Shown piece after piece: positions 1-47,698 of a stretch of 64,000 nt of DNA. The notes beneath the pieces were generated by a model. The model searched no databases, had not been told where the DNA came from, and was given only the letters and a program-made list of their open reading frames with translations. Each line of letters opens with the position of its first letter. The stretch's first letter is position 1. A program made the translations under genes and the position numbers. The stretch covers positions 124,001 through 188,000 of the IMG/VR virus record IMGVR_UViG_3300008110_010000; one strand, written 5' to 3'.

Positions 1-2
1 AC

Positions 3-707
3 TTGATCCTTCCCTTTTCTAGATTTCAGCTAAGAGCTGATTCCCGGGGTAAGGAATTAAGATTGAGATTTATTGATCTTGATTTTAAATATGAGGAAAC
101 ATCAAGTAGGGATATGGTTTTTACTATGGGAATGAGCGGAAATTGGAATTATTCCAACGATGTTTTCTCCATTCCAAACCACACACATCTAAGAATTGTT
201 GATTCCAAGTATGGCATTCTTGGATTACATGACGTTAGAAGATTTGCCAGATGGGACTGGAGAGGATGGAATCCGGAAAGAGGTCCGGACCCAGATACTG
301 AATTTGATTCTTTCGTTGACAACATTTACAAGAATATTCAAACGGACAGGGTTTTTAATAAACCCGTGTATGAAGTATTAATGAACCAAAAATATTTTAA
401 CGGCGTAGGAAATTACTTAAGAGCGGAGATTCTAGGAAGAATCGATTCAGATCCCACAGCTTCTGCCAGAGAATATATTCTTCTTAATGGACCTGAATTT
501 TTTGCTATTCTTTCTAAGGTTATTAAGGAATCCTATATCCTAGGAGGAGGACAATTTAAAGATTGGTACAATCAGGCAGATTTGGAAAAGAAAAAAAGTA
601 AAGAATTTCAAGCATGGATGAAATTCTATTTACATAAAGAAAGGTGTATTGCAATTAAAGATTCGTCTAAAAGAACTTTTTGGATGGATAAAAAATGGAT
701 AAAATGA
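3..707 (+). CDS. nei: Fpg/Nei-family DNA glycosylase/AP lyase, NEIL1-like zincless-finger type (5'-truncated at window edge)
   Basis: Motifs RGKELRL, GMSG, HLR, DVRRFARW, RGP and the H2TH signature LMNQKYFNGVGNYLRAEIL. No C-terminal 4-Cys zinc finger. The N-terminal catalytic PE motif lies outside the window. Confidence 0.88.
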   Translation: MILPFSRFQLRADSRGKELRLRFIDLDFKYEETSSRDMVFTMGMSGNWNYSNDVFSIPNHTHLRIVDSKYGILGLHDVRRFARWDWRGWNPERGPDPDTEFDSFVDNIYKNIQTDRVFNKPVYEVLMNQKYFNGVGNYLRAEILGRIDSDPTASAREYILLNGPEFFAILSKVIKESYILGGGQFKDWYNQADLEKKKSKEFQAWMKFYLHKERCIAIKDSSKRTFWMDKKWIK

Positions 708-1399
708 TAAGTAAAGAAGACCTTAAAAAAATTCTATATTTCGACATCGAAACTGCTGGGATAACGAATACTTTCGAAGAGCTTGAAATTGAAAATCCTA
801 GACTTGCTAAATTGTGGGAAAAAAGATCATCCTGGCTCTTGAAAAATTCAGGTGAAGAGATGAAAGATTATTCTCCAGCAGATTTTTGGAAGGTTAAATC
901 TTCGTTGCACCCGGAGTTCTCCAAAATCGTTTGCATAACTTTTGGATGCTATGATGAAGATAAATCAATCAGGCTAGTTTCTTTTTCCGGTGAAGAGGAT
1001 CAAATTCTGATGGATTCCAACAAGATCTTTAATAACGCATTTACAAAAGGATGGAAACTTGCAGGACATACGATTAAAAATTTTGACATTCCCTTTGTTG
1101 GAAAGAGAATGATAATCAATAAAATTAAGCCTTCCCATTTGGTAGCATATCTGAATAGAAAACCCTGGGAATCTCCACACCTAGACATATCTGAGATTTT
1201 TGCTTTTGGAGGATGGGGACAAACTCACACTTCACTTGATTTAATGGCTTGCGTTCTGGGTATAGAATCCCCTAAAGACGATATGGACGGATCAATGGTC
1301 CATGAATACTTCTATGAGGGAAAGATTGAGAACATTAAAAAGTACTGCGAAATGGATGTGACTGTTCTGATGAAGTGCTTTGATGCTCTTTCTTTTTAA
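695..1399 (+). CDS. 3'-5' exonuclease related to the PolB proofreading domain (DEDD); true start may be ATG 704
   Basis: ExoI YFDIET, ExoII GHTIKNFDIPF, ExoIII YCEMDV, plus SLDLMACVLGIESPK typical of stand-alone PolB-exo2 proteins. ATG 704 forms an ATGA overlap with the upstream stop. Confidence 0.88.
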   Translation: MDKMISKEDLKKILYFDIETAGITNTFEELEIENPRLAKLWEKRSSWLLKNSGEEMKDYSPADFWKVKSSLHPEFSKIVCITFGCYDEDKSIRLVSFSGEEDQILMDSNKIFNNAFTKGWKLAGHTIKNFDIPFVGKRMIINKIKPSHLVAYLNRKPWESPHLDISEIFAFGGWGQTHTSLDLMACVLGIESPKDDMDGSMVHEYFYEGKIENIKKYCEMDVTVLMKCFDALSF

Positions 1400-1420: not shown

Positions 1421-1460
1421 ACACCCTAGGATATATACTTTTAAAATATTCCTAGGGTGT
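1421..1460 (+). promoter_or_regulatory. Inverted repeat enclosing a GATATATA motif and covering the GTG start of the nucleotidyltransferase gene
   Basis: ACACCCTAGGA (1421-1431) pairs perfectly with TCCTAGGGTGT (1450-1460). GATATATA at 1430-1437, GTG start at 1457-1459. Confidence 0.6.
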
Positions 1461-2200
1461 TTCGTATACAAAATTTTAAAGACTGGTCGCTAAACGAGGA
1501 TCGTTTCTATCAAAAGGAGCTAAATACTGTTTTTTGGAAGAATGGCTCGTTCGACTCTGGGGTAAGAGAAAAACTTCTAGATATAGCCCAGGATTTCTAC
1601 TCGATCTTTAAAATAGAACTGCCGATAGATGATATTCAATTAACCGGATCTCTGGCAAATTATAACTGGACCCCAAAATCAGATCTTGATGTTCACGTTT
1701 TAATCGATTTTTCACAGATAGATTCCAATAAAGAGCTTGTAAAAAAAGCTTTTGATGGACAAAGATTCATATGGAATCTAAGGCATAACATTGTTATCAG
1801 AGGGTATGATGTTGAACTTTACCTACAAGACATAAACGAACCCCATGTAGCATCCGGACTTTTTTCCCTTAAAAACAACGAATGGATTAGAATTCCTTCT
1901 TATAATCCTCCTCAGATAGACGAAAGAGATGTGGATTTGAAATATGATGGTATTATAAACGATATAGACAGTGTGGATATAGAACTTTCTAAAACAGACT
2001 CCGAAATGGATGCCAGAGAGGTACATCAGCACGCAGAAAGGGTTAAATCCAAGATCATGAAAATGAGAAAGGAAGGCCTAGAAACCAGAGGAGAATTCTC
2101 AGTAGAGAACCTAGTCTTTAAAAAGTTGAGAAACGAAGGATATATACAGAAGTTAATCGATCTTATATCAAGATCGTACGAAAAAATTTATAGTGAATAA
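1457..2200 (+). CDS. Pol-beta-superfamily nucleotidyltransferase with capsid-targeting-like N-terminus
   Basis: hG[S]x9DxD signature LTGSLANYNWTPKSDLDVHV and third acidic strand YDVELY. N-terminus FRIQNFKDWSLNE. Confidence 0.8.
   Translation: MFRIQNFKDWSLNEDRFYQKELNTVFWKNGSFDSGVREKLLDIAQDFYSIFKIELPIDDIQLTGSLANYNWTPKSDLDVHVLIDFSQIDSNKELVKKAFDGQRFIWNLRHNIVIRGYDVELYLQDINEPHVASGLFSLKNNEWIRIPSYNPPQIDERDVDLKYDGIINDIDSVDIELSKTDSEMDAREVHQHAERVKSKIMKMRKEGLETRGEFSVENLVFKKLRNEGYIQKLIDLISRSYEKIYSE
2139..2146 (+). promoter_or_regulatory. Putative late promoter motif GATATATA (upstream of the 2212 gene)
   Basis: Exact motif about 65 nt upstream of ATG 2212, but inside the preceding CDS. Confidence 0.35.
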
Positions 2201-4800: not shown

Positions 4801-6791
4801 ATGAGTCTTAATAACGAATTCGTTTTAGTCCTTGAAAAATCTTCACATAATATGAAGATGGAGAAAAACGGAAGCGATTATTTCCTAGAAGGAATCGCTG
4901 CTGTTTTTGGTAAGGAGAACTCAAATCAAAGAATCTATGAGGAAAGAGAATATCTCCCCCATCTTCAATATTTGAAAGAAAAAATAGACCAAAAAAGATT
5001 AGTAGGTGAATTAGATCACCCTAAGGAATTTGATGTGTCTCTTAAAAACATTTCTCATATCATTGAGGGACTTAACTATAATCAGGACGACAGAACACTT
5101 CGTATTAAGGTTAAACTTTTAGATACTCCAGCCGGTAAAATAGCTAAGTCTTTAGTTGATGCTGGTGTACCGGTTTCCATTTCTTCGAGAGCAGCTGGTA
5201 ACGTTCTAGAAAACAAAAAAGTGCAAATTAAAAAGATCTTTACATATGATTTAGTGGCAGATCCTGGTTTTGAAAATGCACAGCTTGAGAGAGTTTATGA
5301 AAGTCTTGGATATAACGCTGAGCAAAAAAGCATGGCAGAATCTATCATAAAAGGACTCCCTTTAGTTAACGAAAGTCTTGGATTAGAAAATGATTCAAAT
5401 TTTAAGATATATAGAATAAACGATCAGGAAAAAATAAAAAAGCTTCTAGATAAGGAGCCAAATAAGAGTTTAATCATGGAAAATAATTTCGTTACAGCGG
5501 AGGAAATGAACGGATACTCTAAACTAATTAAAAAGGAGATGGATACTATTAAAGGATCTATTGAATCTTTAAGAACTGTTAAGGGAGAGCCTGTTAAGGA
5601 ATCGAATTCCTCTCTTGAAGAAAGAGTAGCAAAATTGGAAAAGTATGCTGATTATTTGGCAGAAAATCTTGAAGCCTCTATTAAATATGGTGAATACCTA
5701 GCTGAGAATCTAGAAGATTCTGTTTCTTATTCCAAATATTTAGCAGAGAATCTTGATAAATCTATTTCTTATGCTAAGTACCTTGCAGAACATTTGGATA
5801 ACAATATTTCTTACTCTGAATACATCGCAGAAAATGTTGACAATAACATGTCAGCAGTTAAATCTATATCTGAGAGATTAGATCAAGGTATTGCTTACAC
5901 AGAATATGTAGCAGAAAGCGTAGATAAGAATATTAAGTACAGCGAGTATCTTGCTGAGAACTTAGATAAAAATATTTCTTATTCGGAATACCTTGCAGAG
6001 AACGTAGATAAGAACATNNNNNNNNNNNNNNNNNNAACCTAGACAAAGGATTAGCCTATGCTGATTATCTAGGAGAAAATCTTGATAAAACAGTTCAGTA
6101 CAGCGATTATTTAGCTGAAAAGCTTTCTAAGAATATTAGCTATGCTGAATATATTGCCGAGACAGTTAATTCTTCAAACGGCACTAAGGAAATGAAAGAA
6201 GCGGTAACTAAAGCAATTTCAGAGAACACAAATACTTCTGGATATGCTGGAGATTACAGCAAAATTTCAAACAAAATCGACAACTTATTAAATACCGTTA
6301 GTAAACAAAAAACGGAACAAATAGCAGAAGCTAAGAATTTTCCTTTCTTGGGTCTTATGAGCCAAGCAAATCAGACACAATTCTTATCCCTGCATGAGGG
6401 CCAAAAACAAAAGGTCGCTAAAGCGTTGAACGAAAGCAACTACTCATCCGAAAAAGAGGTAGTTGAAATCATGGGTAAAGCTCTGGTTGAACAAAATCAA
6501 TCTGGAGAAAAGTTCTTAGACATGATGCCAGAAAAATATAGAGGAGCTTGGGAAAGCATGAACGAGGGTCAAAAAGCCTCTATCATTGCTCAAAGCAAAT
6601 TCTATAGACTGGACACACCTTACCAAATCCAGAACTTCTGGGCTACTAGGGGTATTTCAGTTCCAAAGGCAAATGTGGAAAGAATAGACGAATCCCAAAA
6701 TCAAACAATCTCAGCTTCTCAGCCAAAGGCAGTCTCTAGAGAATATCTACAGAACCTTTCAGAGGCTTTAGAAGCTAGATTTAAAAAATAA
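4801..6791 (+). CDS. gp21: Prohead core protease (T4 gp21-like) fused to scaffolding protein; one gene split in the ORF track by an assembly gap
   Basis: N-terminal GELDHP, SISSRAAG, TYDLVADPGF are gp21-type motifs. The YxxYLAENL repeats continue after the Ns (from 6036: NLDKGLAYADYLGENL...) in frame with the 6192-6791 ORF. Directly upstream of the MCP. Confidence 0.88.
5641..6168 (+). repeat. In-frame 42-bp (14-aa) tandem repeat, at least 12 copies, consensus xYxEYLAENLDKxI
   Basis: KYADYLAENLEASI, KYGEYLAENLEDSV, SYSKYLAENLDKSI, SYAKYLAEHLDNNI, SYSEYIAENVDNNM, (degenerate SAVKSISERLDQGI), AYTEYVAESVDKNI, KYSEYLAENLDKNI, SYSEYLAENVDKN, [gap], AYADYLGENLDKTV, QYSDYLAEKLSKNI, SYAEYIAETV. Confidence 0.92.
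6018..6035. other. Assembly gap (18 N) inside the scaffold repeat
   Basis: Run of N in the sequence; the flanks are out of frame with each other, consistent with a mis-sized gap in a tandem repeat. Confidence 0.97.
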
Positions 6792-6805: not shown

Positions 6806-8545
6806 ATGCAACTAATTAATCAACATGAAATCTATGAAACCTGGGCTCCAGTACTTGAGAGCAAAACAGGTATTCAAGAGAAAGGCAAATTAGATTGGTT
6901 AACCAAATATTGCCATTATCACTCTCTAAACGAATCTGCTGGTGCGTACAACACTCTTGGCGTACTTGGCGGTATGGGTCAAATTGCTGCTCCTTCAAAC
7001 GTAGGTCTTTCTGGCGGTCCTGCTGGCTTTTATGCTGGTGGTTCTTATGCTGGTACAGGTCTTGGTTCTGGTGACAAATTCCCTTCACTTCTTCCGCTTG
7101 CTATTCAGGTAGCTGCTAAGACAGTAGGTTTTGACATTGTTCCAGTTATCCCAATGAGCGGTCCTACAGGAGTACTTAGCTATCTTGACTATGTATATGC
7201 TGGTGGTAAGCTTTCTGGTACTGACACAGTATCTCCTTACACAGCTTCTTCCCCTGACCTTATTAAAGTTCCTTCCTCAACAGCTTCTCCAGTATCTGGT
7301 TTAACTGTAGGATCAACTTACCTTCTAGGTGCTGCAGGTCTTTCTTCAACAAAAGATCTTGATAGTGCTGGTGTTGGTGCTCTTGTAGCTGGTAAATATG
7401 TTGGTAACTCTCGTATCGATGGTTTTCCAATTTTCCAAGTAATAGCTCAAACAACTGGTTTCTCAATTGCTCAAGCAATCGATGCAGATGCAGTTATCTA
7501 CTCTGGTTCATTCAATACAGGAACAAACGTTTACACAATCTCTGCAACAGTAGGCTATGCTAACGGTGCTGCAGTATTAGTTAAGACTCTAGAAGATCAC
7601 GTACAAGGTGCTTCTGGTGCTGGTCTTGACAACACAAACGCTTGGCAAGGTCCATACGTAGACGGTACAAAAGCCTACGATCCTATGTCAAGAGGTACAG
7701 CTGAAAGTACTTATTTCAAGTCTCTTGGTTTAACTACTTTCACTAAGTTCGTAGAAGCTGGAACTTTCCAAGTTGCTGCTTCTGTGACAACTGAGCAAAT
7801 CCAAGATCTTAACAAGCAATTCGGTATCGACGTAGTTTCTATGATCGAAAACGCACTTGTTAATGAGGTTTCTCAGGCGATCAACAAGCACATCCTTTCT
7901 AGAGCATTTGCTCTTGGATGGTCTAACCACGCTGAATTCAAGAACACAGAAGGTACTAACCTTAACTTGAACTTGAAATTCACTGGAGGTGGATCTAACT
8001 TAACCTTCATCGGTAAAGATAACGCTCAGCTTGTAATTGCTGGTGGTACTGCTATCGGTACAGGTGGTTATGAGAACCAGTCAACTGTACAAAGAAGACT
8101 ATTCTCAAGAATCCTTGCTGCTGCTAACGTGGTTGCAAACAGAGGAAGAAGAGGCCCTGCTAACTTCATCGTTACTAACTCTCAAGTTGCCTCTGCTTTA
8201 CAGGATATCTCTCAGTTCACTTTCGCTCCTTTCACAAACACTCTTACTCAGAACAACGGTACACTTTACCCAGTTGGTTCTATCGCTGGTATGACAGTTT
8301 ATGTTGACCAGAACATGTCTTTCGGAGACACAAGAGTGCTAGTAGGTAGAAAAGGTGGAGACGACGAACCAGGTCTTAAGTTCATGCCTTACATGATGGC
8401 TGAGTCAATTCAGACTATCTCTGAAGGTACTATGTCACCTAAGATTGCAGTTAAATCTAGATACGCTCTAGTTGAGGCTGGTCACCATCCTCAAACAATG
8501 TACATCTGCTTCCACGTAGAAGTACCTGCAACTGGTATTGCTTAA
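6806..8545 (+). CDS. gp23: Major capsid protein, T4 gp23-like, with a large Ser/Thr/Gly/Ala-rich insertion
   Basis: VVPVIPMSGPTG-type motif (IVPVIPMSGPTGVLSYLDY), EINKHIL-like segment, RGRRGPANFIVT, FMPYM...PKIAVKSRYAL. Strong highly-expressed codon bias. Follows the protease/scaffold. Confidence 0.95.
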   Translation: MQLINQHEIYETWAPVLESKTGIQEKGKLDWLTKYCHYHSLNESAGAYNTLGVLGGMGQIAAPSNVGLSGGPAGFYAGGSYAGTGLGSGDKFPSLLPLAIQVAAKTVGFDIVPVIPMSGPTGVLSYLDYVYAGGKLSGTDTVSPYTASSPDLIKVPSSTASPVSGLTVGSTYLLGAAGLSSTKDLDSAGVGALVAGKYVGNSRIDGFPIFQVIAQTTGFSIAQAIDADAVIYSGSFNTGTNVYTISATVGYANGAAVLVKTLEDHVQGASGAGLDNTNAWQGPYVDGTKAYDPMSRGTAESTYFKSLGLTTFTKFVEAGTFQVAASVTTEQIQDLNKQFGIDVVSMIENALVNEVSQAINKHILSRAFALGWSNHAEFKNTEGTNLNLNLKFTGGGSNLTFIGKDNAQLVIAGGTAIGTGGYENQSTVQRRLFSRILAAANVVANRGRRGPANFIVTNSQVASALQDISQFTFAPFTNTLTQNNGTLYPVGSIAGMTVYVDQNMSFGDTRVLVGRKGGDDEPGLKFMPYMMAESIQTISEGTMSPKIAVKSRYALVEAGHHPQTMYICFHVEVPATGIA

Positions 8546-12961: not shown

Positions 12962-13501
12962 ATGTCCCTTTTTGTTGTAGAGGGAGCCAGAAAGTCAGGT
13001 AAAACTTTTTTTGTCAGCTCCCAAAATACCTTTCCAGTTTTTAAGTTCGATTTTAACGGAGCTTATACAAATTTAGAACTCCCAGAGGGTGGAGAGATAA
13101 CTCATGGTATCGGATTAGGCAAGGAATTAATGGTTCATCAATTGAATAGAGATTCTTTTTTACCCGATTTAATCATGGATCGGGGGGTAATTACCAATTC
13201 CGTCTGGGGAATACTTAACAACCGGGTATCCCGCGATACAGTTTATCAGGAATTGGCTTACATGGTAAAAAATAATCTTTTTAAAGATGTCTTTTTCTTT
13301 TATGTTTATGGAACATACCAAGGAGAAAGAAAAAAAGACGTTTGGGACCACATGGATAAAATGATCCCGAAGGAAATAGAAATCTTTGATGAGATCATAG
13401 CTTATCTTTCGTTAGCCGGTGTTAAGATTCACAAGGTTGAAAACAAGTTTGATCTTGAATCGCTATCCGGATTTCAGACTATAATTAAGAACTTAAAATA
13501 A
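12962..13501 (+). CDS. P-loop nucleoside-monophosphate kinase-like protein (dNMP/thymidylate kinase fold)
   Basis: N-terminal Walker A VVEGARKSGKT and a DRG motif (IMDRGVITNSVWG) as in dTMP kinases. Confidence 0.65.
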   Translation: MSLFVVEGARKSGKTFFVSSQNTFPVFKFDFNGAYTNLELPEGGEITHGIGLGKELMVHQLNRDSFLPDLIMDRGVITNSVWGILNNRVSRDTVYQELAYMVKNNLFKDVFFFYVYGTYQGERKKDVWDHMDKMIPKEIEIFDEIIAYLSLAGVKIHKVENKFDLESLSGFQTIIKNLK

Positions 13502-14919
13502 TGTGCGGAATACTAATTGCTCATAATCCCTCAGAGGAAAGGATAAAATCCATTTCTCATAGAGGTATTGAATATTACACTCATTCAGATGCTTCTGGAC
13601 TGACTCTATGCCACCATAGATTGCCTATTCAGACTGCAGTTGGTGACGGCTGGATTCAGCCAGTAGAGTTATCTAATAACCGTTATCTCCTATTTAACGG
13701 GGAAATTTTTAATTACCCCTTACATTATGGATCAGATACAGAATACCTCAAAGATCTTTTTAGTACCTTTGAATTTTCCTCCTTGGAGATGTTTATCTCT
13801 CTATATGAACCACATATTAAAAGCTGGGATGGGTTTTGGGCTATTTGCTTGGTTGATATGTCCAAGAAAGATGTGATTTGCTTTACAGATCCTCTAGGTA
13901 AGAAGTGCCTTTATACCAACGAATTAGGTGAGATCTGTTCAGAGATGAAAGGTTTACTGAATGAAAATTCTATAATTAGCTCAGGATTTATGGGCGGTGT
14001 GAGGAAATGGGGGTATGTTGCTAACGAATCTACCCCCTTCGAAAACGTCCAAAAATTAAAACCTAATTTCATCTACAAATGGAATTTTAATGCTCCGGAC
14101 TTTAAGCAAGAATATGGTCCTTATTTCGCATTTAAACCCCCCAAATTTCAATTTGATTCTGAAGACATGTTACTAGATTGGGTTTGGAATAAACTCGAGC
14201 TGGCAACAAAAAACAGGCTATTAAGCTTGGATTATCCTATCTCCATCTTACTATCCGGTGGATTGGACTCTTCTATCATAGGAGGGTTACTTCTTAAACT
14301 TGGGGCAGATGTTAGCTGGTACACTATCAATAATGGTCCAGATGACGAATATGTTAGAGAATGCGAGGATTACTGGGGAATAAAAGTAAATCGCCTAGAA
14401 TACAACATGAATGAGGTAGATTTAGATCTAAACGAGATTTATTTTAGGTGGAACGAATCCCCCGTTGATATGGGAAGTGTGGTACCCCAATATCATCTCT
14501 TTGATGCTATTAAAAAAGGAACAAATACCAGAATAGTTTTATCCGGTGATGGGGCGGATGAAATGTTTGGGGGGTATCGGAGAATAAACGAATATGATTC
14601 CCAGCAATCCGATATTTTCCATGAACTCACATATTATCACCTTCCTAGATTAGATAAAATGAGTATGGCACATACTTTGGAGTTAAGAAACCCGTTTTTA
14701 AATTTAGAACTAATTCAGCTTGCAATGTGGCTTCCATTTGAATACCGGAAGAATAAGACAATTTTGAAAAAAACTTTCAAAGGGCTAGTTCCAGATTCTG
14801 TTATAGAAAGAAAGAAACATCCTTTAAAGAACGACAAAATAGTAAAAGATCCCAATGATTATAGGGTTGAAGCTATTAATTACTTTGTAAAGGGATACGA
14901 AAACTATCTTTTAAAATAG
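13501..14919 (+). CDS. asnB: Asparagine synthetase B-like glutamine amidotransferase
   Basis: Ntn Cys at MCGI, HRG, HHRL, FNGEIFNY; synthetase SGGLDSS, SGDGADEMFGGY, RLDKMSMAHTLELRNPFL. Confidence 0.92.
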   Translation: MCGILIAHNPSEERIKSISHRGIEYYTHSDASGLTLCHHRLPIQTAVGDGWIQPVELSNNRYLLFNGEIFNYPLHYGSDTEYLKDLFSTFEFSSLEMFISLYEPHIKSWDGFWAICLVDMSKKDVICFTDPLGKKCLYTNELGEICSEMKGLLNENSIISSGFMGGVRKWGYVANESTPFENVQKLKPNFIYKWNFNAPDFKQEYGPYFAFKPPKFQFDSEDMLLDWVWNKLELATKNRLLSLDYPISILLSGGLDSSIIGGLLLKLGADVSWYTINNGPDDEYVRECEDYWGIKVNRLEYNMNEVDLDLNEIYFRWNESPVDMGSVVPQYHLFDAIKKGTNTRIVLSGDGADEMFGGYRRINEYDSQQSDIFHELTYYHLPRLDKMSMAHTLELRNPFLNLELIQLAMWLPFEYRKNKTILKKTFKGLVPDSVIERKKHPLKNDKIVKDPNDYRVEAINYFVKGYENYLLK

Positions 14920-36849: not shown

Positions 36850-37635
36850 ATGTCTGTACAGAATATTCAAGAATCAAATATTGAAAGAGCCCAGCATTTC
36901 TTGGGTGTTGTTGTGGATAACAAAGATCCGGAATTTAGGGCAAGATGTAAAGTTAAGGTTTTTGGAGTATTTGACGATGTTGCAGATACGGATCTACCAT
37001 GGGCGTTCCAAAGATTTGATATTTCATTTGGTGACAATGGTGGATCTGGAAGGGTTAGTATACCTAAATTAGGTGCAGTTGTCCATGTCCAATTCAATAA
37101 CGGGAACTACTATGCCCCCGAATACAAAGCAGTACAAGAATTATCTTCCGATTTAATAGAAGAAATAAAAGCATCTTATGAAGGTGCTCATTCTCTAATC
37201 TATGACGGAATAGAACAGCTAAAAATATATTACACTGTTGCTAAAGGACTCGTAATAGATTTAAAAGAGTCAACTGTGGTAATTTCTAATGATAATTCAA
37301 TAACAATAACACATGCTGGCCAAACATCTACCCTTGAATTTAGAGGTGGTAAAATTACAGAGTATGCAAATTCTGAAATAGAAAGCACTGCAGTAACTAG
37401 AATTAAACAAAGCAGCAACGAAGTTTGGGCAGACGGTAAAACAACAAAGCTTGGTCATTCCCCTGTTTATTCTGCAGTTTTAGCGGAACCTTTATGGATG
37501 TTTTTAAAACAACTCGCAGCAGCGGTAGATGCTAAAGTTCCTTCCTGTCCTGGGTGTATGGCTACCCTTGCAGAAAGCTACGAACAGCTCTCTACGTCCG
37601 ATGTGGTTAAGTTAACTAAGAGTAATGAGCAATAA
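36850..37635 (+). CDS. gp5: Baseplate central spike, gp5 N-terminal OB-fold type, no lysozyme domain
   Basis: FLGVVVDNKDPEFRARCKVKVFG...LPWA...IPKLGAVVHVQFNNGNYYAPEY followed by beta-strand repeats. Confidence 0.85.
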   Translation: MSVQNIQESNIERAQHFLGVVVDNKDPEFRARCKVKVFGVFDDVADTDLPWAFQRFDISFGDNGGSGRVSIPKLGAVVHVQFNNGNYYAPEYKAVQELSSDLIEEIKASYEGAHSLIYDGIEQLKIYYTVAKGLVIDLKESTVVISNDNSITITHAGQTSTLEFRGGKITEYANSEIESTAVTRIKQSSNEVWADGKTTKLGHSPVYSAVLAEPLWMFLKQLAAAVDAKVPSCPGCMATLAESYEQLSTSDVVKLTKSNEQ

Positions 37636-40600
37636 TTTAGAAAACCTTGATAAGTGGGTAAAAGATCTCGAAAACGGTACTATAACTGTTGAAGAGTTAG
37701 CTGCAAGATTGTCTTCCATTCCTGATCCTCTCGGGAAGGAGGAAGATATAATTAACGCTGGGGAAGAAATTAATAATTCATTAAATCCTGAAGATTTAAT
37801 ACTTACTGATAATGAGATAAATGATATTATATGTAAATACGAGGGCGAGGAATTAGGAAATAGATTAATCTGGAAAATTTTAGAAAAACTTAATTTAACT
37901 TCAGATCTTAAAGAAATTCCGGATTTTTCTAATAATGACTCATTTGAGAAATATTTTGAAAGAATTTCTTTGCAAGATAGATTACAAAGAGCCAAGGAAA
38001 TGCTTTTTGATAATCTTGATTTAGATCTTATAGGCATCAAAGTTAAAAGCCCTAATTTAAAAAAAAGAAATTTTAAAATTCTAGGCTTTAATTTTCCTCT
38101 CAATATCATAACATATAAGGGTAAGCCCTTGTTTTTTCATATAGCTCCTCCTAAGGTCAACCTCTCCAAAATACTTCAAAGACTAAGAGACAGAATAAAA
38201 TCTAAAAAGGTAAAGAGCTGCGAAAAGAAAGGAACTTATATAGATGAGGATGATCTTTTAAAAAAGTTAGAGAATCTTCTAAACGACGAAAAGGAAGAAT
38301 ATAACAATGTATTTGAAATCGCTGATGAGGTTTTTTGTGAGCCTGATATTCCAATTAATCCTGAAACGGGGGAATCGCTTTTCACAAAAAACGACTTAAC
38401 TCAGTTTTTGAAAGAAATATGTGAGCCCGAAATTCCTTCTCCAGAAACACCTATCGATCCTGAACCTGATATAGAAGATATTTCAGACACTATTAATTCG
38501 TGCTTAAAGCAAACTAAATCCATATTTAATGAAGTTAGGGAAAAGAATGAAGAAAAAGCTAGACTTCAAAAAGCAGAAAAAGAGCTGGAGGAGGTTTTGT
38601 TTTATTATAAAATAATTCATAATTATTATGACGAATTATATTCCCAATTTGAAAAGAAAAGCAAAGCGGGTAAAAAAGGAGATCCATTAAAATTAGCAAT
38701 CAATTTAGTACTTGGAACCGGAGCTGACGATTATATAAAGAAATTAAATCAATTTTCTTCAAGATTTCAGTCTACTAAAAAAATAATACTTCCTGGTAGT
38801 AAATACATTGGAATATCATTTGGAATAGATTTTCCACACGGCTTAGGGAAAAAAATTCCGTATGAGAGAGTAAAAATGGAGGTTAATAACGATCTGATGA
38901 GTCAAGATTATCAAAAGGTCGACACATCTAAACTCCAGGTAGGAATGGAGTACAGCAAGGGTGGATTATTAGGAGGGCAGGATACCTCATTTTTCAAAGA
39001 TTTTGAATCTTTTTTAAAAATCAAGGATGAAAATCCTAAGAATAAAACAGACTACTATAGTTTCGTTAGCGATATAGAAAACTCTAACAAAAGCAAGGGT
39101 CAAATTATTAAATCAATAGAATCTGATCATGGATTTTTATTTTCCAATCTAATAGAGACATCTGCAAGTCCTTGGATATTTTTTACTGCTCAGGAAAGAG
39201 GAGATAATGATGCTAGAAAATCTGCCGATATAAAACCAGCAAAAACCGACAAGGAAGGAAATCCAAACAAGGAATTTGAAGAATTCTGGCAAGACTTTAA
39301 AACAAAATGGGACCAAAAGTATAACGATAGAAAGAAAACAATAGAGGATAAAATACTGGATTTAAAAAAATCTTCGGATGCCTTAGCAGAAAAAATAGCG
39401 GATTATTATTTTACGATCAGCGTGTCTTCTGTAAAGAAAAATAGTGAACTTCTTAAAGAAGCTTCAGATGGAATAAAATCAAGGGTTACTGCAATTGAAA
39501 ATTCTTTAATGTCAATAGCTGAGAAGATAACTAAGTTAGATCAGGAGAATTCTCCAGAGGGACTTTCCACCAAAGCTAATTCCATAAGTTGTGCCACTAA
39601 AAAAGAAGAGAAATGCCCAACAGAATGTTGCGGTCCTGCTGGGCAGAGTTTAAAATTAAAAGATACATGTGCTTCACATCGATCTCCGGATTGTCCAAAT
39701 CTTTTTACCAAATGCTATTGGAAAGAGTTTTGTAAAAATTTAAATAAAGTGGGATTACTCCCCCTCCCTGCTGGTCTTCCCCCTATAGAAAATCCCGCAA
39801 ATTTTTTACCGAATCTGGGTTTAAAATATTGGCCGGTAGGTTATCTTCCGCCATCTTTTATACCTTTACCTCCACCGATAGTGAATCCATTAGACGGGTT
39901 ACCTTTTATTAGAATTCCTATGCCAATGGTATGGACGAAGGTAGATCCTGTTGTTATTCCGATAGGAATTGGGGTCATAGTTATATTCGTTCCTTTCATC
40001 GGGGGATTCATGCCTAGCCCCCTAGTTTTTTTCCATGATTTTTTAACTGGGAATAGTATGTTTCTTCTTGGACTCAGAGGGTTTAGGTTCATTCCTAGAA
40101 AATCTGATCCTGTTGCTAACGATCCTCTCGAAAATTACAAAAAGATGCTTTCTAAAGGAATACCAAACTTTCTTTTTCCTTTTTCCAACCTTGGAAAAGA
40201 TGACGTTGATGATCCTAAAAGACTTTTCGGAGAAGTTGTTTCGAATCTTGAAAAGAGACTTGCAAATTATAGCAAGCCTGTAAACATGGAGAAAATCCAA
40301 AAATTACAAGACAAGATAACAAAAAAGAAAGAGGAGTCTCAATCTAAGATACTAGAAAAGAAAAGAAAAATGGCTTTAGAGGGTGGAGATATTAAAAAAG
40401 AGAAGGAGGAAATAGACAACTTTCTAAAATCTATAGACGGTGAAAAAATATCAGCCTTAAAAGATATTATGAAAGAATATTTGACGGGAGCGGTAGACAT
40501 TCCAGATATTCAGTTCCCTAAAAAATCAAAAAATCTTTTAGTTGATCTGCCCCAGCCTATAAAATCTTTAAGGGATTTAGATGCTAAAAGAAAACTTGGT

Positions 40601-41929
40601 GTTATCCCGGATAAAATTCCCAAGATAAATCTTTTATCTAGGATCCTTAGAGGAGTAGATTCTATAAAAATTCCTACCCCAAAAGAATTAGACGATTTAA
40701 ACAAAAATCTTCCTAATAATTCTAAGATAGTTGCTAAATTTAATAATAAACTGAAGGATCTTTCTAGTTCTCCCGAGGACGTAAAAAAATTAGAAGATTT
40801 AGTTAAGAAAAGTGCAACTGAGGTTTTTGAAGGTGAGGATTCTCCTTTAAGTAGTAAAAAACTTCTTTCGTTTAAAGCTAAAATAACACCCGCCCCTAGA
40901 ATTTTAGGTGCAGGTGTACCTTTGCCTTCTGGAATAGAAGAAATACCAAATCCTGTTATTTCTCAATTAAAAAACTTTGCCACAAGTAGTATAAAATTAA
41001 ATACAGATCAACTAACATCTATAGTAAGTAATTTAGCAATTTCTGAGAATAAGATTATAAGACAGCGGGATCTTAAAATGATCACAAAGAACGTAATTAA
41101 TAGTTCGCTATCAAAATTTCCTGTTGATTTAAAAAACTTTTCCATTCCTGATACTGCAAGCATGAAAAACATGCAGAAATCATTTACTAATTTGTCTTCT
41201 TCGTTAAACCTCCCTTCCATTCCTCCTAAGAAAAGCGCTTCACCTGTTTCTCCGATTGGCCCTGGAGGTATTCCCCCTATAATCATTCCAGGAAAAGTGA
41301 TTAGTAAATTCTTGGTTGATGGAGCAATGTCTTCTGTAAATCCTGAAATGATCACTAAATTATTGCCAGGGGTTCTTGAAAACTTCGAAACGTTATCAGA
41401 TAGTGACATTAAAACAATGTCAGATAATATTGTTAAGAATTTTACTAAAACAGCTAAGATACCTGCTTTGGATTCTATTCCAAAGATACCCATCCCTGCA
41501 AGGAATCAGGATTATATAGAATTCACTATGAATTTCTTACCAACTCATCCAGCCTCTGATATAGCATTTACCCAACTTTGGGATAAATTTAAAACCCCTC
41601 CAAGAATTCCTATCCCTGGTGAATTTCTTCAAAAGTATCTGGATATACAGGATGCAATATTCTCTAAGGTCCCTTGGCCTGTGGTAGTTGTACTGGGTAG
41701 AAATATTATTAATATCTTAAATCCTTTATGGAACAACGAAGATATCCCACGCTGGGACAGAATGAGTTTAAAGAATCCTTTTTATGTTGTTTTCATGGAC
41801 GAGTTCTTAAGATCTGCTGTTGATATCTCAGGAGGCTTTAAATTCTTTGCCGGTGCGGGAAAATTATTTTATCCTCTGCCAGATTCTGAAATCTATCTAG
41901 GGTTTGGGACTAAAATATCAATAAATTAA
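37625..41929 (+). CDS. 1434-aa hypothetical protein, probably baseplate-associated; Cys cluster and Pro-rich hydrophobic core
   Basis: Overlaps the gp5 stop. CPTECC...C...C...C...C segment followed by PLPAGLPP...IPIGIGVIVIFVPF. Confidence 0.45.
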   Translation: MSNNLENLDKWVKDLENGTITVEELAARLSSIPDPLGKEEDIINAGEEINNSLNPEDLILTDNEINDIICKYEGEELGNRLIWKILEKLNLTSDLKEIPDFSNNDSFEKYFERISLQDRLQRAKEMLFDNLDLDLIGIKVKSPNLKKRNFKILGFNFPLNIITYKGKPLFFHIAPPKVNLSKILQRLRDRIKSKKVKSCEKKGTYIDEDDLLKKLENLLNDEKEEYNNVFEIADEVFCEPDIPINPETGESLFTKNDLTQFLKEICEPEIPSPETPIDPEPDIEDISDTINSCLKQTKSIFNEVREKNEEKARLQKAEKELEEVLFYYKIIHNYYDELYSQFEKKSKAGKKGDPLKLAINLVLGTGADDYIKKLNQFSSRFQSTKKIILPGSKYIGISFGIDFPHGLGKKIPYERVKMEVNNDLMSQDYQKVDTSKLQVGMEYSKGGLLGGQDTSFFKDFESFLKIKDENPKNKTDYYSFVSDIENSNKSKGQIIKSIESDHGFLFSNLIETSASPWIFFTAQERGDNDARKSADIKPAKTDKEGNPNKEFEEFWQDFKTKWDQKYNDRKKTIEDKILDLKKSSDALAEKIADYYFTISVSSVKKNSELLKEASDGIKSRVTAIENSLMSIAEKITKLDQENSPEGLSTKANSISCATKKEEKCPTECCGPAGQSLKLKDTCASHRSPDCPNLFTKCYWKEFCKNLNKVGLLPLPAGLPPIENPANFLPNLGLKYWPVGYLPPSFIPLPPPIVNPLDGLPFIRIPMPMVWTKVDPVVIPIGIGVIVIFVPFIGGFMPSPLVFFHDFLTGNSMFLLGLRGFRFIPRKSDPVANDPLENYKKMLSKGIPNFLFPFSNLGKDDVDDPKRLFGEVVSNLEKRLANYSKPVNMEKIQKLQDKITKKKEESQSKILEKKRKMALEGGDIKKEKEEIDNFLKSIDGEKISALKDIMKEYLTGAVDIPDIQFPKKSKNLLVDLPQPIKSLRDLDAKRKLGVIPDKIPKINLLSRILRGVDSIKIPTPKELDDLNKNLPNNSKIVAKFNNKLKDLSSSPEDVKKLEDLVKKSATEVFEGEDSPLSSKKLLSFKAKITPAPRILGAGVPLPSGIEEIPNPVISQLKNFATSSIKLNTDQLTSIVSNLAISENKIIRQRDLKMITKNVINSSLSKFPVDLKNFSIPDTASMKNMQKSFTNLSSSLNLPSIPPKKSASPVSPIGPGGIPPIIIPGKVISKFLVDGAMSSVNPEMITKLLPGVLENFETLSDSDIKTMSDNIVKNFTKTAKIPALDSIPKIPIPARNQDYIEFTMNFLPTHPASDIAFTQLWDKFKTPPRIPIPGEFLQKYLDIQDAIFSKVPWPVVVVLGRNIINILNPLWNNEDIPRWDRMSLKNPFYVVFMDEFLRSAVDISGGFKFFAGAGKLFYPLPDSEIYLGFGTKISIN

Positions 41930-45717: not shown

Positions 45718-47442
45718 ATGGATTTATTCAAAAAAAATCGGGCTAAAATTCAGGATCTTCTTCAGGATACTCTTGAGATCATCCAGAAAAGATATAATCA
45801 AGCCAATCAATTATTTACAGTAGCTTCTGCTTGGGGACAAATATTATTTGTTCTGCAGAACCTTTCTCAGCTAATCCTTTACTTTATTGAGGATTCTATT
45901 ACTGAGCTTGATATTAGAAAAGCAAGTAGGGAAAGTTCAATTTATGGACTTGCTGCTCTTGCTGGACATAACGCTTCCAGAAGTACTGCTGCAAGGGGCC
46001 AGGTGGAAATTATATGGAACGGAACAGATGCAACAACTGTAGGCGGTGGAGCAATTCTAATTCCTAGATATGCTCAAATTAAATTTTCTAACGGTGGCGT
46101 TTCTTATGTTTTAAACTTTCCCCAGGAATATACTAGGATTAATCTAAATTCTTCTTCCAAGGTTTCTTGTGAAATATTAGAGGGAAGCATTAAAACTTCG
46201 ACATTCACAGGAAACGGAAGATCACTACAAAGTTACAACGTGTCTGACAGGATTACTTCCGCCATTGACAACTTTCAAGTTAAAGTTTTTGTAGACAGTG
46301 ACGAATGGAAGGTTTATGATTCTTTATATGATATTCCATTTAATGCAGAGGGTGTTTTGGTTAGAACCGGTATCAGTAGTGGTATAGACGTAATTTTTGG
46401 AAATTTAAATTTTGGAAAAATCCCTCCTACTGGATCCACAATACAGGTACAATATCTGGAAACCCTAGGGTCTGGAGGAAATATCAGTTCTCTTGAACCT
46501 GGAAAAATAGCATTTGAATTTAGCGACGACGGAACGGATTCTTTCGGTAATTCAGTTTCCCTTCAGGAGTATTTAAAAATAAACTGCACCGTTGCACCTC
46601 AGTTAGGAACCGATAAAGAATCCATAGAACTTACAAGAATTCTTGCTCCTAAAACCTCAAGATCTTTTGTTTTAGCAAATCCCGATAATTATATTACATA
46701 CTTTGAAAAATTTGGTATATTCTCAATTATTGAGGCTTTTTCAACCTTTGATGATCAATATCTGGATGATGATAATATTATTTATGTTCTTTTAGTACCT
46801 GATATAACTCAGAAATTAAAAACTAATGAAACGTATTTTGATATTGCAGAGACAGAATTCAAGCTGACAGAATTCCAAAAAAATAGACTTCTTCAAGCAA
46901 TCGAAGATAGCGGACAGAAAATTGTTACTACTGAAGTAAGAATATTAGATCCTAAAATTTCTAGGTATGTTTTAAATATACTCATAACTGTTTTTGAAGG
47001 TTATGATCCTGATACTATAAAAGGACAAATCATTGATTCTATTAGCAATTACTTTATAGGTATTAGAAGAAGAGACAAAATCCCTAGATCTGATTTAATT
47101 TCAATTGTAGAATCTGTTCCGGGGGTAGATTCAGTTACTTTATTTTTTATATCTGAAAAAAATGAACTGTATGCTAAAAGTGTAGAATCTCTTCCTGATA
47201 CAGATCCTAAAAAGAAAACGGTTTTAGGTTTAGATGATTTTGGAGATATTCTTTTTGATAAGGATGAAATAGTAATACTTACTGGCGGATGGTCAGACAG
47301 AGCTGGTTTATTTTATGATAAAGGAGCGGATTTAAACAAGTTATCTTCAATCAATATAGATATTAGAAAAACAGTTCCTGTTACCTACAACACAGAGGTA
47401 AATATGAAGAACAAGCAATTCATAAGAAATAGTAATTCATAA
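45718..47442 (+). CDS. gp6: Baseplate wedge protein gp6-like
   Basis: LAALAGHN, VIFGNLNFGKIP, IQVQYLETLGSGGN, GTDKESIELTRILAP...RSFVLANPDNY; follows gp25. Confidence 0.85.
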   Translation: MDLFKKNRAKIQDLLQDTLEIIQKRYNQANQLFTVASAWGQILFVLQNLSQLILYFIEDSITELDIRKASRESSIYGLAALAGHNASRSTAARGQVEIIWNGTDATTVGGGAILIPRYAQIKFSNGGVSYVLNFPQEYTRINLNSSSKVSCEILEGSIKTSTFTGNGRSLQSYNVSDRITSAIDNFQVKVFVDSDEWKVYDSLYDIPFNAEGVLVRTGISSGIDVIFGNLNFGKIPPTGSTIQVQYLETLGSGGNISSLEPGKIAFEFSDDGTDSFGNSVSLQEYLKINCTVAPQLGTDKESIELTRILAPKTSRSFVLANPDNYITYFEKFGIFSIIEAFSTFDDQYLDDDNIIYVLLVPDITQKLKTNETYFDIAETEFKLTEFQKNRLLQAIEDSGQKIVTTEVRILDPKISRYVLNILITVFEGYDPDTIKGQIIDSISNYFIGIRRRDKIPRSDLISIVESVPGVDSVTLFFISEKNELYAKSVESLPDTDPKKKTVLGLDDFGDILFDKDEIVILTGGWSDRAGLFYDKGADLNKLSSINIDIRKTVPVTYNTEVNMKNKQFIRNSNS

Positions 47443-47443
47443 A

Positions 47444-47698
47444 ATGTTTAATACTGAAAGAAAAAGTTATTATGACTACATAAATTCAACAAGAGATAAT
47501 AGATCAAATGTTGGATTCAACTACGAGGGGCAGATATTTGAAAAAACCCTGTCCTCTATAACACTTGAAGGCGACAAAAACAGGAAAAGTATAATGTCGT
47601 ATATCGAGAGGGTAGTTTATAGATTAATCGAGGCAACTAAGGGAATTAGAAATTTTGTTAACTACAGAGTTCCTAAAAATAATAAGTACGTTAGGTAA
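47444..47698 (+). CDS. Small baseplate-associated hypothetical protein
   Basis: Tightly coupled between the gp6-like and gp7-like genes. Confidence 0.55.
   Translation: MFNTERKSYYDYINSTRDNRSNVGFNYEGQIFEKTLSSITLEGDKNRKSIMSYIERVVYRLIEATKGIRNFVNYRVPKNNKYVR

What the first reader, a model, noticed from the sequence alone, without database searches (positions are those of the whole stretch)
3..707. Phage DNA glycosylase that looks like metazoan NEIL1 rather than bacterial Fpg/Nei
Seen: RGKELRL, FTMGMSG, PNHTHLR, DVRRFARWD, WNPERGP, LMNQKYFNGVGNYLRAEIL, and a C-terminus FQAWMKFY...IKDSSKRTFW with no zinc-finger cysteines. Known: bacterial Fpg/Nei end in a 4-Cys zinc finger. Human NEIL1, as I recall it, has ARGKELRL, FRFGMSG, PRHAHLR, DIRRFGRWD, WQPGRGP, LLDQRFFNGIGNYLRAEIL and a zincless finger FRAWLRCY...LQDRHGRTIW. 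The block-by-block match is much closer than expected for a bacterial Nei. Inference: a NEIL1-lineage enzyme in a bacteriophage, relevant to NEIL1's origin and to repair of oxidised or modified phage bases.
Basis: partly seen in the sequence, partly recalled or inferred. Interest (0 to 1): 0.68.

Follow-up and report, generated by a model that had tools for sequence, protein, structure and literature searches.

The report
NEIL1-type DNA glycosylase in a phage
A large freshwater T4-like phage carries a complete, compact DNA-repair glycosylase that is clearly the NEIL1 type known from animals, and it belongs to a big, undescribed, mostly phage-borne family that is the closest non-eukaryotic relative of NEIL1.

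Summary
Window 3..707 holds the last 234 codons of a 272-aa gene whose ATG lies 112 nt upstream of the window. The protein begins MPE, the catalytic Pro2/Glu3. It matches human NEIL1 at E 4e-30 and E. coli Fpg only at 1.6e-4. A family profile gives NEIL1 9e-63, and every other Fpg/Nei structure scores 7e-17 or worse. The AlphaFold model superposes on NEIL1 at TM 0.85. It has no Cys4 zinc finger.

The contig is a 219-kb T4-like myovirus (portal, prohead protease, Gp23 capsid, baseplate), not eukaryotic contamination. The gene is not a one-off capture. At least 368 IMG/VR contigs and 81 50%-identity clusters (E ≤1e-30) encode relatives. Only 11 bacterial MAG loci turned up, mostly Poribacteria. 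No GenBank phage record and no paper were found.

Eukaryotic NEIL1 (animals, a choanoflagellate, an amoebozoan, a euglenid) is monophyletic (99/99) and arises from the same unresolved radiation. Sister and nested placements cannot be separated (AU p 0.61).

The gene is flanked by a UvdE-like endonuclease and a translationally coupled 3'-5' exonuclease, and this linkage recurs in half of the viral loci. The likely role is phage-encoded excision repair of oxidised bases. It is a new member of a known kind.

The parts
1..707 (+). 3' 234 codons (frame from base 3) plus the stop codon of the 272-aa NEIL1-type glycosylase gene. The gene starts 112 nt upstream of the window (L001:1387-2205). The first 38 residues, including Met1-Pro2-Glu3, lie outside the window.
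   Evidence: PDB phmmer gives NEIL1 at 4e-30. The family profile gives 9e-63. Foldseek gives TM 0.85 to NEIL1.
51..53 (+). Codon of Lys55 in SRGKELRL, which aligns with catalytic Lys54 of human NEIL1
   Evidence: Read from the sequence, aligned, invariant in A1 and A2.
396..434 (+). Core of the H2TH DNA-binding motif, FNGVGNYLRAEIL (residues 170-182)
   Evidence: N171, G172, G174, N175, Y176 and R178 are invariant in the family.
603..692 (+). Zincless-finger region (residues 239-268), a beta-hairpin carrying invariant Arg262 and Trp265. Arg262 aligns with the Arg of the NEIL1 GRTIW block. There is no Cys4.
   Evidence: The model has strands 253-257 and 263-267. Aligned. No CxxC..CxxC was found in 270 family proteins or 95 locus proteins, while the E. 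coli Fpg and Nei controls were positive.
695..1399 (+). PolB-exo-like 3'-5' exonuclease gene. Its ATG overlaps the end of the glycosylase gene by 13 nt.
   Evidence: PF10108 at 7.6e-16 and phrog_25228 at 4.7e-34. A homologue lies immediately adjacent on the same strand in 40 of 79 viral loci, 27 downstream and 13 upstream.
1457..2200 (+). Nucleotidyltransferase-like gene of unknown role, conserved downstream in the same synteny block
   Evidence: Weak PF01909 and PF22600 matches, phrog_36119. A homologue is present in 23 of 79 viral loci.
4801..6791 (+). T4-type prohead protease/scaffold gene (phage hallmark), interrupted in the window by 18 N at 6018-6035
   Evidence: PF03420 Peptidase_S77 on the intact 693-aa copy. 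The N run is seen.
6806..8545 (+). Gp23-type major capsid protein (phage hallmark)
   Evidence: PF07068 at 2.2e-40. The nearest GenBank relatives are large phages, mostly of Bacteroidota.
45718..47442 (+). Baseplate wedge protein (phage hallmark, myovirus)
   Evidence: phrog_219 at 2.1e-29.

Best explanation
The gene encodes a compact (272 aa) NEIL1-type member of the Fpg/Nei (H2TH) superfamily carried by a roughly 220-kb or larger freshwater T4-like myovirus. It is inferred to be a bifunctional DNA glycosylase/AP lyase. The inferred mechanism is as follows. After Met1 removal, the N-terminal Pro2 amine attacks C1' of an everted damaged nucleotide, assisted by Glu3 and Lys55. Met82, Arg118 and Phe119 fill the gap in the helix. 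The H2TH motif and Arg262 of a zincless beta-hairpin hold the lesion's phosphates. Beta,delta-elimination then leaves a one-nucleotide gap with a 3'-phosphate. By analogy with NEIL1, the preferred substrates would be oxidised pyrimidines, Fapy purines and hydantoins, possibly in replicating or single-stranded phage DNA. The gene lies in a repair cluster: ATP-dependent ligase, 5'-3' flap exonuclease, a UvdE-like endonuclease immediately upstream and a translationally coupled PolB-exo-like 3'-5' exonuclease downstream. The likely pathway is that the glycosylase excises the base, the UvdE-like enzyme and/or the exonuclease restore a 3'-OH, and the phage polymerase and ligase finish the repair. 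What is shown: family membership, conserved catalytic residues, the fold, the phage context and the conserved gene linkage. What is inferred: activity, substrates and the division of labour with the neighbouring genes.
For: Sequence. Human NEIL1 scores 4e-30, against 1.6e-4 or worse for any Fpg or Nei. The family profile gives NEIL1 9e-63 over residues 1-263 against 1-282; MvNei1 gives 7e-17, E. coli Fpg 1.8e-15, E. coli Nei 3e-8, and NEIL2 and NEIL3 about 1e-3. Identity is 33-35% to eukaryotic NEIL1 cores and 20-23% to E. coli Nei and Fpg.

Catalytic and DNA-binding residues are invariant or near-invariant in 23 diverse relatives: P2, E3, K55, M82, R117, R118, F119, N171, R262.

Structure. 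pLDDT is 92.3, TM to NEIL1 is 0.85 with 31-32% identity over about 272 columns, and the C-terminus forms a beta-hairpin. There is no Cys4 anywhere in the family.

Phage context. Portal_T4, Peptidase_S77, Gp23 and a baseplate wedge are present.

Repair context. Ligase, 5'-3' exonuclease, UvdE and an exonuclease are nearby. The exonuclease is adjacent in 40 of 79 viral loci in two different orders, and UvdE is adjacent in 27 of 79. UVDE enzymes cleave AP sites and clean 3'-blocking groups (PMC8307549). No Xth-family or PNK3P 3'-phosphatase was found in the 219-kb record.
Against: No biochemical data exist. The protein itself does not reach Pfam's Neil1-DNA_bind model; only 11 of 23 relatives do. 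Its H2TH score is below Pfam's gathering cut-off. Tyr244 of the NEIL1 lesion loop is Trp226 here, and the loop motif GGGQFKDW resembles Fpg's GGTTLKDF more than NEIL1's, so substrate preference may differ from NEIL1. Metatranscriptome contigs covered only the two neighbouring genes, not the glycosylase, and DNA carry-over is not excluded. The record is about 79% complete, so the absence of other end-cleaning enzymes is not proven.
Confidence: 0.72

Rival explanations
1. The enzyme has the NEIL1 fold and chemistry but serves phage-host conflict rather than housekeeping repair. It might remove bases that a host defence has modified or adducted in phage DNA, or attack host DNA to aid takeover and nucleotide recycling.
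For: The family is overwhelmingly viral and spans unrelated phage types: 40-77-kb contigs with sigma factor, PolB and RNR, and 200-318-kb jumbo phages. It is rare in bacteria. The lesion-recognition loop differs from NEIL1. Tight coupling to an exonuclease would also suit DNA degradation.
Against: All residues needed for ordinary lesion excision are conserved. The co-located UvdE, ligase and flap nuclease point to repair rather than destruction. No defence or anti-defence genes were seen next to it in the window's phage. I found no evidence in this genome of base modification that would protect phage DNA from such an enzyme, though I did not search for it specifically.
Confidence: 0.15
2. A recent capture of a eukaryotic (metazoan) NEIL1 cDNA by a phage.
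For: The closest solved structure is human NEIL1.
Against: Eukaryotic NEIL1 sequences (tuatara, three molluscs, a choanoflagellate, an amoebozoan, a euglenid) form one clade that excludes every phage-type protein (99/99, and in 100% of bootstrap trees). The phage family is very diverse, with 81 clusters at E<=1e-30. It lacks the insertion of about 20 aa and the long tail of eukaryotic NEIL1, and it keeps an Fpg-like GGxxLKDW motif.
Confidence: 0.03
3. An ordinary bacterial Fpg or Nei picked up from the host.
For: Weak hits to the NCBIfam Fpg and Nei equivalogs and to Pfam Fapy_DNA_glyco and H2TH.
Against: NCBIfam scores of 20-44 bits are far under the cut-offs of 203-423. There is no zinc finger. 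The profile scores NEIL1 46 orders of magnitude better than any Fpg or Nei. Only 11 loci were found among 185,579 species' genomes.
Confidence: 0.03
4. Eukaryotic contamination or a chimeric contig end.
For: The gene touches the window's edge.
Against: The window is an internal slice (124001-188000) of a 219,355-bp record. Phage genes lie on both sides. The identical protein occurs on at least 24 contigs, and near-identical DNA occurs in freshwater and lake metagenomes of 12 or more studies. Synteny is conserved in phages only 45-70% identical.
Confidence: 0.01

Closest known systems
Human/eukaryotic NEIL1 (endonuclease VIII-like 1; e.g. PDB 1TDH, 5ITX, 6LWx)
   Same: N-terminal Pro-Glu, Lys in the GKELxL block, the Met/Arg/Phe void-filling triad, the H2TH motif FNG(I/V)GNYLRAEIL, and a zincless beta-hairpin with the RT(F/I)W arginine. 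Identity is 33-35%, TM 0.85, profile E 9e-63.
   Different: The phage protein is 272 aa against roughly 330-630 aa. It has no disordered C-terminal tail and lacks the insertion of about 20 aa after H2TH. The lesion loop reads GGGQFKDW (Lys224, Trp226) instead of GGKGY (Lys242, Tyr244). It is encoded by a bacteriophage next to a UvdE-like endonuclease and an exonuclease.
Mimivirus Nei1 (MvNei1, PDB 3A42/3A45/3A46), described in the literature as a viral NEIL1 orthologue
   Same: A virus-encoded, zincless-finger Fpg/Nei glycosylase.
   Different: MvNei1 is much more distant: profile E 7e-17 against 9e-63 for NEIL1, and single-sequence E 3.5e-3. Giant-virus Fpg-like proteins in BFVD are only 16-20% identical. 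MvNei1 comes from a virus of eukaryotes, not a tailed phage.
Bacterial Fpg/MutM and Nei (endonuclease VIII)
   Same: The same superfamily, N-terminal Pro/Glu chemistry and H2TH. The phage family keeps the Fpg-like GGxxLKD(F/W) motif.
   Different: 20-23% identity, a Cys4 zinc finger instead of the zincless hairpin, and failure of the NCBIfam equivalog cut-offs.
Phage T4 endonuclease V (DenV)
   Same: A functional analogue: a phage-encoded bifunctional DNA glycosylase/AP lyase that repairs the phage's own DNA (from my own knowledge).
   Different: An unrelated fold, specific for cyclobutane pyrimidine dimers. Not compared computationally here.
Chromosomal NEIL1-like genes of some Poribacteria MAGs
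   Same: The same short family, 38-42% identical and zincless.
   Different: They sit in genuinely bacterial neighbourhoods (sulfatases, RlmL, YkuD). They are the only PF01149 hit in the two Poribacteria genomes tested. They are present in only 7 of 176 genomes of the phylum.

Membership tests
NEIL1 subfamily of Fpg/Nei | N-terminal Met-Pro-Glu (Pro2 nucleophile, Glu3) | tested here: met
   The full ORF recovered from the genome begins MPEISEV. M1, P2 and E3 are invariant in 23 relatives.
NEIL1 subfamily of Fpg/Nei | Catalytic Lys in the (S/A)RGKEL block (human K54) | tested here: met
   K55 aligns with the NEIL1 GKELRL block and is invariant.
NEIL1 subfamily of Fpg/Nei | Void-filling Met/Arg/Phe triad (human M81, R118, F120) | tested here: met
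   M82 lies in GMSG, and R118 and F119 lie in DVRRFARWD. All align with the NEIL1 blocks.
NEIL1 subfamily of Fpg/Nei | H2TH DNA-binding motif | tested here: met
   FNGVGNYLRAEIL matches NEIL1's FNGIGNYLRAEIL at 12 of 13 positions. The Pfam H2TH hit is 1.7e-4 to 2.1e-4, below the gathering score.
NEIL1 subfamily of Fpg/Nei | Zincless finger: a C-terminal beta-hairpin without Cys4, carrying the DNA-binding Arg (human R277) | tested here: met
   No CxxC..CxxC is present, and the controls were positive. Strands 253-257 and 263-267 appear in a model with pLDDT 92. R262 aligns with the Arg of RTIW. Zinc content itself was not measured.
NEIL1 subfamily of Fpg/Nei | Closer to NEIL1 than to any other Fpg/Nei clade | tested here: met
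   PDB sequence and profile searches and Foldseek all rank NEIL1 first by wide margins.
NEIL1 subfamily of Fpg/Nei | Pfam PF09292 Neil1-DNA_bind domain | tested here: inconclusive
   P0002 does not hit it at E<=0.01 or at E<=1. Eleven of 23 relatives do, with a best E of 1.3e-9.
NEIL1 subfamily of Fpg/Nei | Groups with eukaryotic NEIL1 in a tree | tested here: inconclusive
   With E. coli Fpg and Nei as the only outgroups, eukaryotic NEIL1 (99/99) and the short family share one unresolved radiation. Monophyly of the short family is not rejected (p-AU 0.61). The other Fpg/Nei clades (NEIL2/3, plant and fungal, actinobacterial, MvNei) could not be added as sequences.
NEIL1 subfamily of Fpg/Nei | Long disordered C-terminal interaction tail of animal NEIL1 | tested here: not met
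   The protein ends 7 residues after the zincless finger. This is a feature of animal NEIL1, not of the catalytic core.
NEIL1 subfamily of Fpg/Nei | Glycosylase plus beta,delta-lyase activity on oxidised pyrimidines, Fapy lesions and hydantoins | not testable with these tools
   Needs enzyme assays.
Bacterial Fpg (MutM) | Cys4 zinc finger and a score above the equivalog cut-off | tested here: not met
   No Cys4. TIGR00577 scores 41 bits against a cut-off of 203, and NF002211 scores 43.5 against 212.
Bacterial Nei (endonuclease VIII) | Cys4 zinc finger and a score above the equivalog cut-off | tested here: not met
   NF007763 scores 33.6 bits against a cut-off of 252. PDB Nei gives E 0.16 with the single sequence.
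Tailed phage (Caudoviricetes, T4-like myovirus) as carrier | Hallmark structural genes on the same contig | tested here: met
   Portal_T4, Peptidase_S77, Gp23 and a baseplate wedge. The record is an IMG/VR record of 219 kb.

The most novel reading that the evidence does not exclude
Eukaryotic NEIL1 did not arise within animals. It descends from this prokaryotic-virus/bacterial lineage of short zincless glycosylases through an ancient transfer into an early eukaryote, so the phage family preserves the ancestral form (no tail, no insertion, Fpg-like GGxxLKDW loop). In phages it also works as a self-contained excision-repair module, in which the coupled PolB-exo-like exonuclease and/or the UvdE-like enzyme replace PNKP/APE in clearing the 3'-phosphate.
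Probability: 0.3. Interest if true: 0.75.

Novelty: new member of a known kind. Interest (0 to 1): 0.55.

Why it matters
In the Fpg/Nei literature I could read, NEIL1 is treated as a metazoan clade, with mimivirus Nei1 as a distant viral orthologue (PMC3188539). This work shows a much closer relative, 33-35% identical to eukaryotic NEIL1 cores and with every catalytic residue conserved. It is common in uncultured tailed phages of fresh and marine waters and rare in bacteria. Eukaryotic NEIL1 emerges from the same radiation. Three consequences follow. The origin of NEIL1 becomes a testable phylogenetic question. Small, tail-less natural NEIL1 cores become available for structural and substrate work. 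A conserved UvdE / NEIL1-like / exonuclease gene trio suggests a phage-encoded excision-repair route for oxidative and UV damage. The chemistry itself is expected to be conventional.

Tried and rejected
1. tblastn of the protein against 50,697 GenBank phage records found nothing at E 1e-5. Records close to the window's own genome may be hidden, so this shows rarity among deposited phages, not absence.
2. BFVD (predicted structures of viral proteins) held only giant-virus Fpg-like proteins and Bacillus phage G gp292, at 16-20% identity.
3. Five paper searches found no description of NEIL1-type enzymes in phages. Subscription-only papers are not covered.
4. An IQ-TREE mixture-model run on 177 rows did not finish in two calls. 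It was replaced by FastTree on all rows and by quick and careful IQ-TREE runs on 75 rows. The rows left out were fragments under 235 aa and redundant members of the same clades.
5. Nesting of eukaryotes inside the phage family, as seen in the rooted FastTree and quick trees, is not supported. The constrained alternative had a better likelihood, and the careful tree has a polytomy at its backbone. The early-branching P0198 is a long branch.
6. Expression: two freshwater metatranscriptomes held contigs only in the UvdE-like gene and the exonuclease gene, none in the glycosylase. This is inconclusive.
7. PNK3P and Xth-family genes were not found in the record. The record is about 79% complete.
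8. Promoter and terminator scans showed nothing above the shuffled background.
9. I sent no complex prediction because I do not claim that the proteins bind each other.
Human NEIL1 appears only as PDB matches returned by tools.

Full report
**1. What is at the coordinates**

The window is an internal slice (124001-188000) of a 219,355-bp IMG/VR virus record that CheckV rates about 79% complete. Reading upstream in that record gives the whole gene: 272 codons, ATG start 112 nt before the window (L001:1387-2205), beginning MPEISEVRIM. The TTG at base 3 is not the start.

**2. Is the NEIL1 resemblance real?**

Yes.
- A phmmer search of all PDB chains puts human NEIL1 first at E 4e-30. E. coli Fpg follows at 1.6e-4, mimivirus Nei1 at 3.5e-3 and E. 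coli Nei at 0.16.
- A profile of 23 diverse relatives (A1) hits NEIL1 at 9e-63 over its whole catalytic core (1-263 against 1-282). MvNei1, Lactococcus, E. coli and Arabidopsis Fpg and MvNei2 lie at 7e-17 to 7e-15. E. coli Nei is at 3e-8, and NEIL2 and NEIL3 are near 1e-3.
- NCBIfam's Fpg and Nei equivalog models score 20-44 bits against cut-offs of 203-423.
- An AlphaFold2 model (mean pLDDT 92.3) superposes on human NEIL1 crystal structures with TM 0.85 and 31-32% identity over about 272 columns.
- In a direct alignment the protein is 33-35% identical to the cores of tuatara, oyster, sea-hare, euglenid and choanoflagellate NEIL1. It is 23% identical to E. coli Fpg and 20% to Nei.

**3. Catalytic anatomy**

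- Invariant or nearly invariant across the family are P2, E3, E6, K55 (GKEL block), M82 (GMSG), R117, R118 and F119 (RRFARW), N171, G172, G174, N175, Y176 and R178 (H2TH), and R262 and W265.
- These align with the NEIL1 nucleophile, the acid, Lys54, the Met81/Arg118/Phe120 void-filling triad, the H2TH motif and the zincless-finger arginine. The human residue numbers are from my own knowledge of the NEIL1 literature.
- The model ends in a two-stranded hairpin, 253-257 and 263-267.
- A CxxC...CxxC pattern is absent from all 270 family proteins and 95 locus-encoded proteins examined, while the E. coli Fpg and Nei controls have it.
- Differences from eukaryotic NEIL1: no C-terminal tail, no insertion of about 20 residues after H2TH, and a lesion loop reading GGGQFKDW. 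That loop resembles E. coli Fpg's GGTTLKDF more than NEIL1's GGKGY. Lys224 sits at the position of NEIL1 Lys242 and Trp226 at that of Tyr244.
- P0002 itself does not reach Pfam's Neil1-DNA_bind model, but 11 of 23 relatives do.

**4. The carrier is a tailed phage, not contamination**

- Within 10 kb upstream lie a T4-type portal, an ATP-dependent DNA ligase, an AAA protein, a guanylate kinase, a 5'-3' exonuclease and a UvdE-like endonuclease.
- Downstream lie a PolB-exo-like exonuclease, a nucleotidyltransferase-like gene, a T4-type prohead protease, a Gp23 capsid protein and, further on, a baseplate wedge protein.
- GC is uniform at about 0.32-0.40.
- A family-B polymerase and a small HhH-GPD ORF lie elsewhere in the record.
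- The identical protein is on at least 24 contigs. Near-identical DNA is in freshwater and lake metagenomes of 12 or more studies.
- The capsid protein's nearest GenBank relatives (39-45% identity) are an uncultured 462-kb phage, the Prevotella Lak megaphages, and phages of Tenacibaculum, Chryseobacterium, Flavobacterium and Sphingomonas. This is a weak hint of a Bacteroidota host.

**5. The family**

- The word-indexed search found 995 clusters (90% identity) at E<=1e-3. Nearly all are 259-304 aa, and JGI often auto-names them 'endonuclease VIII-like 1'.
- The exhaustive search of 1.84 billion representatives found 644 clusters (50% identity) at E<=1e-3, 309 at <=1e-10 and 81 at <=1e-30.
- A pattern scan of IMG/VR found 368 viral contigs encoding a relative.
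- The nearest ESM-Atlas clusters are 84-95% viral, commonest phylum Uroviricota.
- Other carriers look like unrelated phages: a 69-kb contig with sigma factor, PolB and ribonucleotide reductase; a 261-kb contig with HNH and LAGLIDADG endonucleases; and a 202-kb contig with PhoH.
- The same kind of scan over one genome for each of 185,579 prokaryote species found only 11 loci. Eight are in Poribacteria MAGs, and the others are in Saprospirales, Flavobacteriaceae and Neomarinimicrobiota MAGs.
- The Saprospirales contig has the phage's own gene order, so it is a phage contig binned with a bacterium.
- A Poribacteria contig is genuinely bacterial, carrying sulfatases, RlmL and an L,D-transpeptidase. 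In all five MAGs tested, including two Poribacteria genomes, the gene is the only Fapy_DNA_glyco hit. Only 7 of 176 genomes of the phylum have it.
- No GenBank phage record matched. No close relative exists in BFVD. No paper describing such phage enzymes was found. The Fpg/Nei classification I could read lists the NEIL1 clade as metazoan (PMC3188539).

**6. Relation to eukaryotic NEIL1**

- Among the representatives, the longer proteins (roughly 330-630 aa) are eukaryotic NEIL1. The named examples are Sphenodon, Mactra, Aplysia, Crassostrea, the choanoflagellate Mylnosiga, the amoebozoan Endostelium and the euglenid Ploeotia.
- In FastTree (177 rows), quick IQ-TREE and careful IQ-TREE LG+C20 (75 rows), these form one clade. 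Support is 99/99, and the clade appears in all bootstrap trees.
- That clade emerges from the same poorly resolved radiation as the roughly 30 short lineages.
- The query sits in an all-viral or metagenomic clade (95/90 for 8 rows, 100/99 for its 4 nearest).
- Rooted on E. coli Fpg and Nei, which are long branches, the eukaryotes look nested. However, forcing all short proteins into one clade gave a better likelihood than the quick free tree (+7.9 lnL, p-AU 0.61).
- A recent eukaryote-to-phage capture is therefore excluded. Sister and ancestor relationships remain open.

**7. How it most likely works**

- The glycosylase gene overlaps the exonuclease gene's start by 13 nt. No terminator-like site separates the UvdE-like, glycosylase, exonuclease and nucleotidyltransferase-like genes.
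- A homologous exonuclease is immediately adjacent on the same strand in 40 of 79 viral loci, downstream in 27 and upstream in 13. The UvdE-like gene is immediately upstream in 27.
- Linkage that survives a change of gene order argues for a shared function.
- NEIL-type beta,delta-elimination leaves a 3'-phosphate (established knowledge). UVDE enzymes cut at AP sites and clean 3'-blocking ends (PMC8307549). No Xth-type or PNK3P-type enzyme was found in the record.
- I therefore infer a phage excision-repair route. The glycosylase removes oxidised bases. The UvdE-like enzyme and/or the 3'-5' exonuclease restore a 3'-OH. The polymerase, flap nuclease and ligase complete the repair.
- This is inference. 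Expression evidence is inconclusive.

**8. Verdict**

- The enzyme is a new member of a known kind, with an unexpected and undescribed distribution.
- Interest is moderate to high for DNA-repair evolution. The mechanism is probably conventional.

Noticed in passing
L001:569-1333 (G000:C1:123071-123835), just upstream of the window: A divergent UvdE-like UV-damage endonuclease (PF03851 at 1.5e-10; TIGR00629 well below its cut-off). It lies 53 nt upstream of the glycosylase and is conserved at that position in 27 of 79 related viral loci.
   Followed up: partly
window 6018-6035: A run of 18 N inside the prohead protease/scaffold gene (4801-6791), in a stretch of degenerate YLAENLD-type peptide repeats (42-nt tandem repeat at 5693-5789). 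The intact copies on other contigs are 693 aa. The gap splits the ORF in the window.
   Followed up: partly
window 13501-14919: An asparagine synthase-like gene (Asn_synthase plus glutamine amidotransferase domains) in the phage. It may be an auxiliary metabolic gene.
   Followed up: no
window 37625-41929, 47698-55227, 59177-62710: Very large ORFs of 1434, 2509 and 1177 aa with no functional annotation, only PHROG families of unknown function. They sit in the region of the baseplate gene and are probably tail or fibre components.
   Followed up: no
window 1457-2200: A nucleotidyltransferase-like gene (weak NTP_transf_2 and poly(A)-polymerase palm matches, phrog_36119) that travels with the glycosylase-exonuclease pair in 23 of 79 viral loci. 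Its role is unknown.
   Followed up: partly
G000:C1:215668-215964 (outside the window): A short (131-aa open frame) HhH-GPD domain hit, a possible second DNA glycosylase in the same phage. It lies close to the family-B polymerase at 217498 onwards.
   Followed up: no
L004 (contig CALAZP010000278.1 of a Saprospirales MAG): This 'bacterial' contig has the same gene order as the phage: UvdE-like, NEIL1-like, exonuclease, NTase-like and prohead protease, with 32-63% identity. It is a related phage binned into a Bacteroidota MAG, either mis-binned or a hint of the host.
   Followed up: partly
L002, L003, L005-L007, L009, L010 (Poribacteria MAG contigs); L008 ('uncultured bacterium' MAG) falls in the same clade: Sponge-associated Poribacteria carry chromosomal NEIL1-type genes in ordinary bacterial neighbourhoods. 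These were the only Fpg/Nei-family hit in the two Poribacteria genomes tested. One genome has two copies. Only 7 of 176 genomes of the phylum have the gene.
   Followed up: partly
window 1-64000: No tRNA genes were found in the 64-kb window (ARAGORN). Almost all genes are on the + strand.
   Followed up: no
L001 913-1063 and 2402-2590: Two freshwater metatranscriptome assemblies each hold one short, identical contig, one in the UvdE-like gene and one in the exonuclease gene. Neither holds one in the glycosylase. DNA carry-over cannot be excluded.
   Followed up: partly
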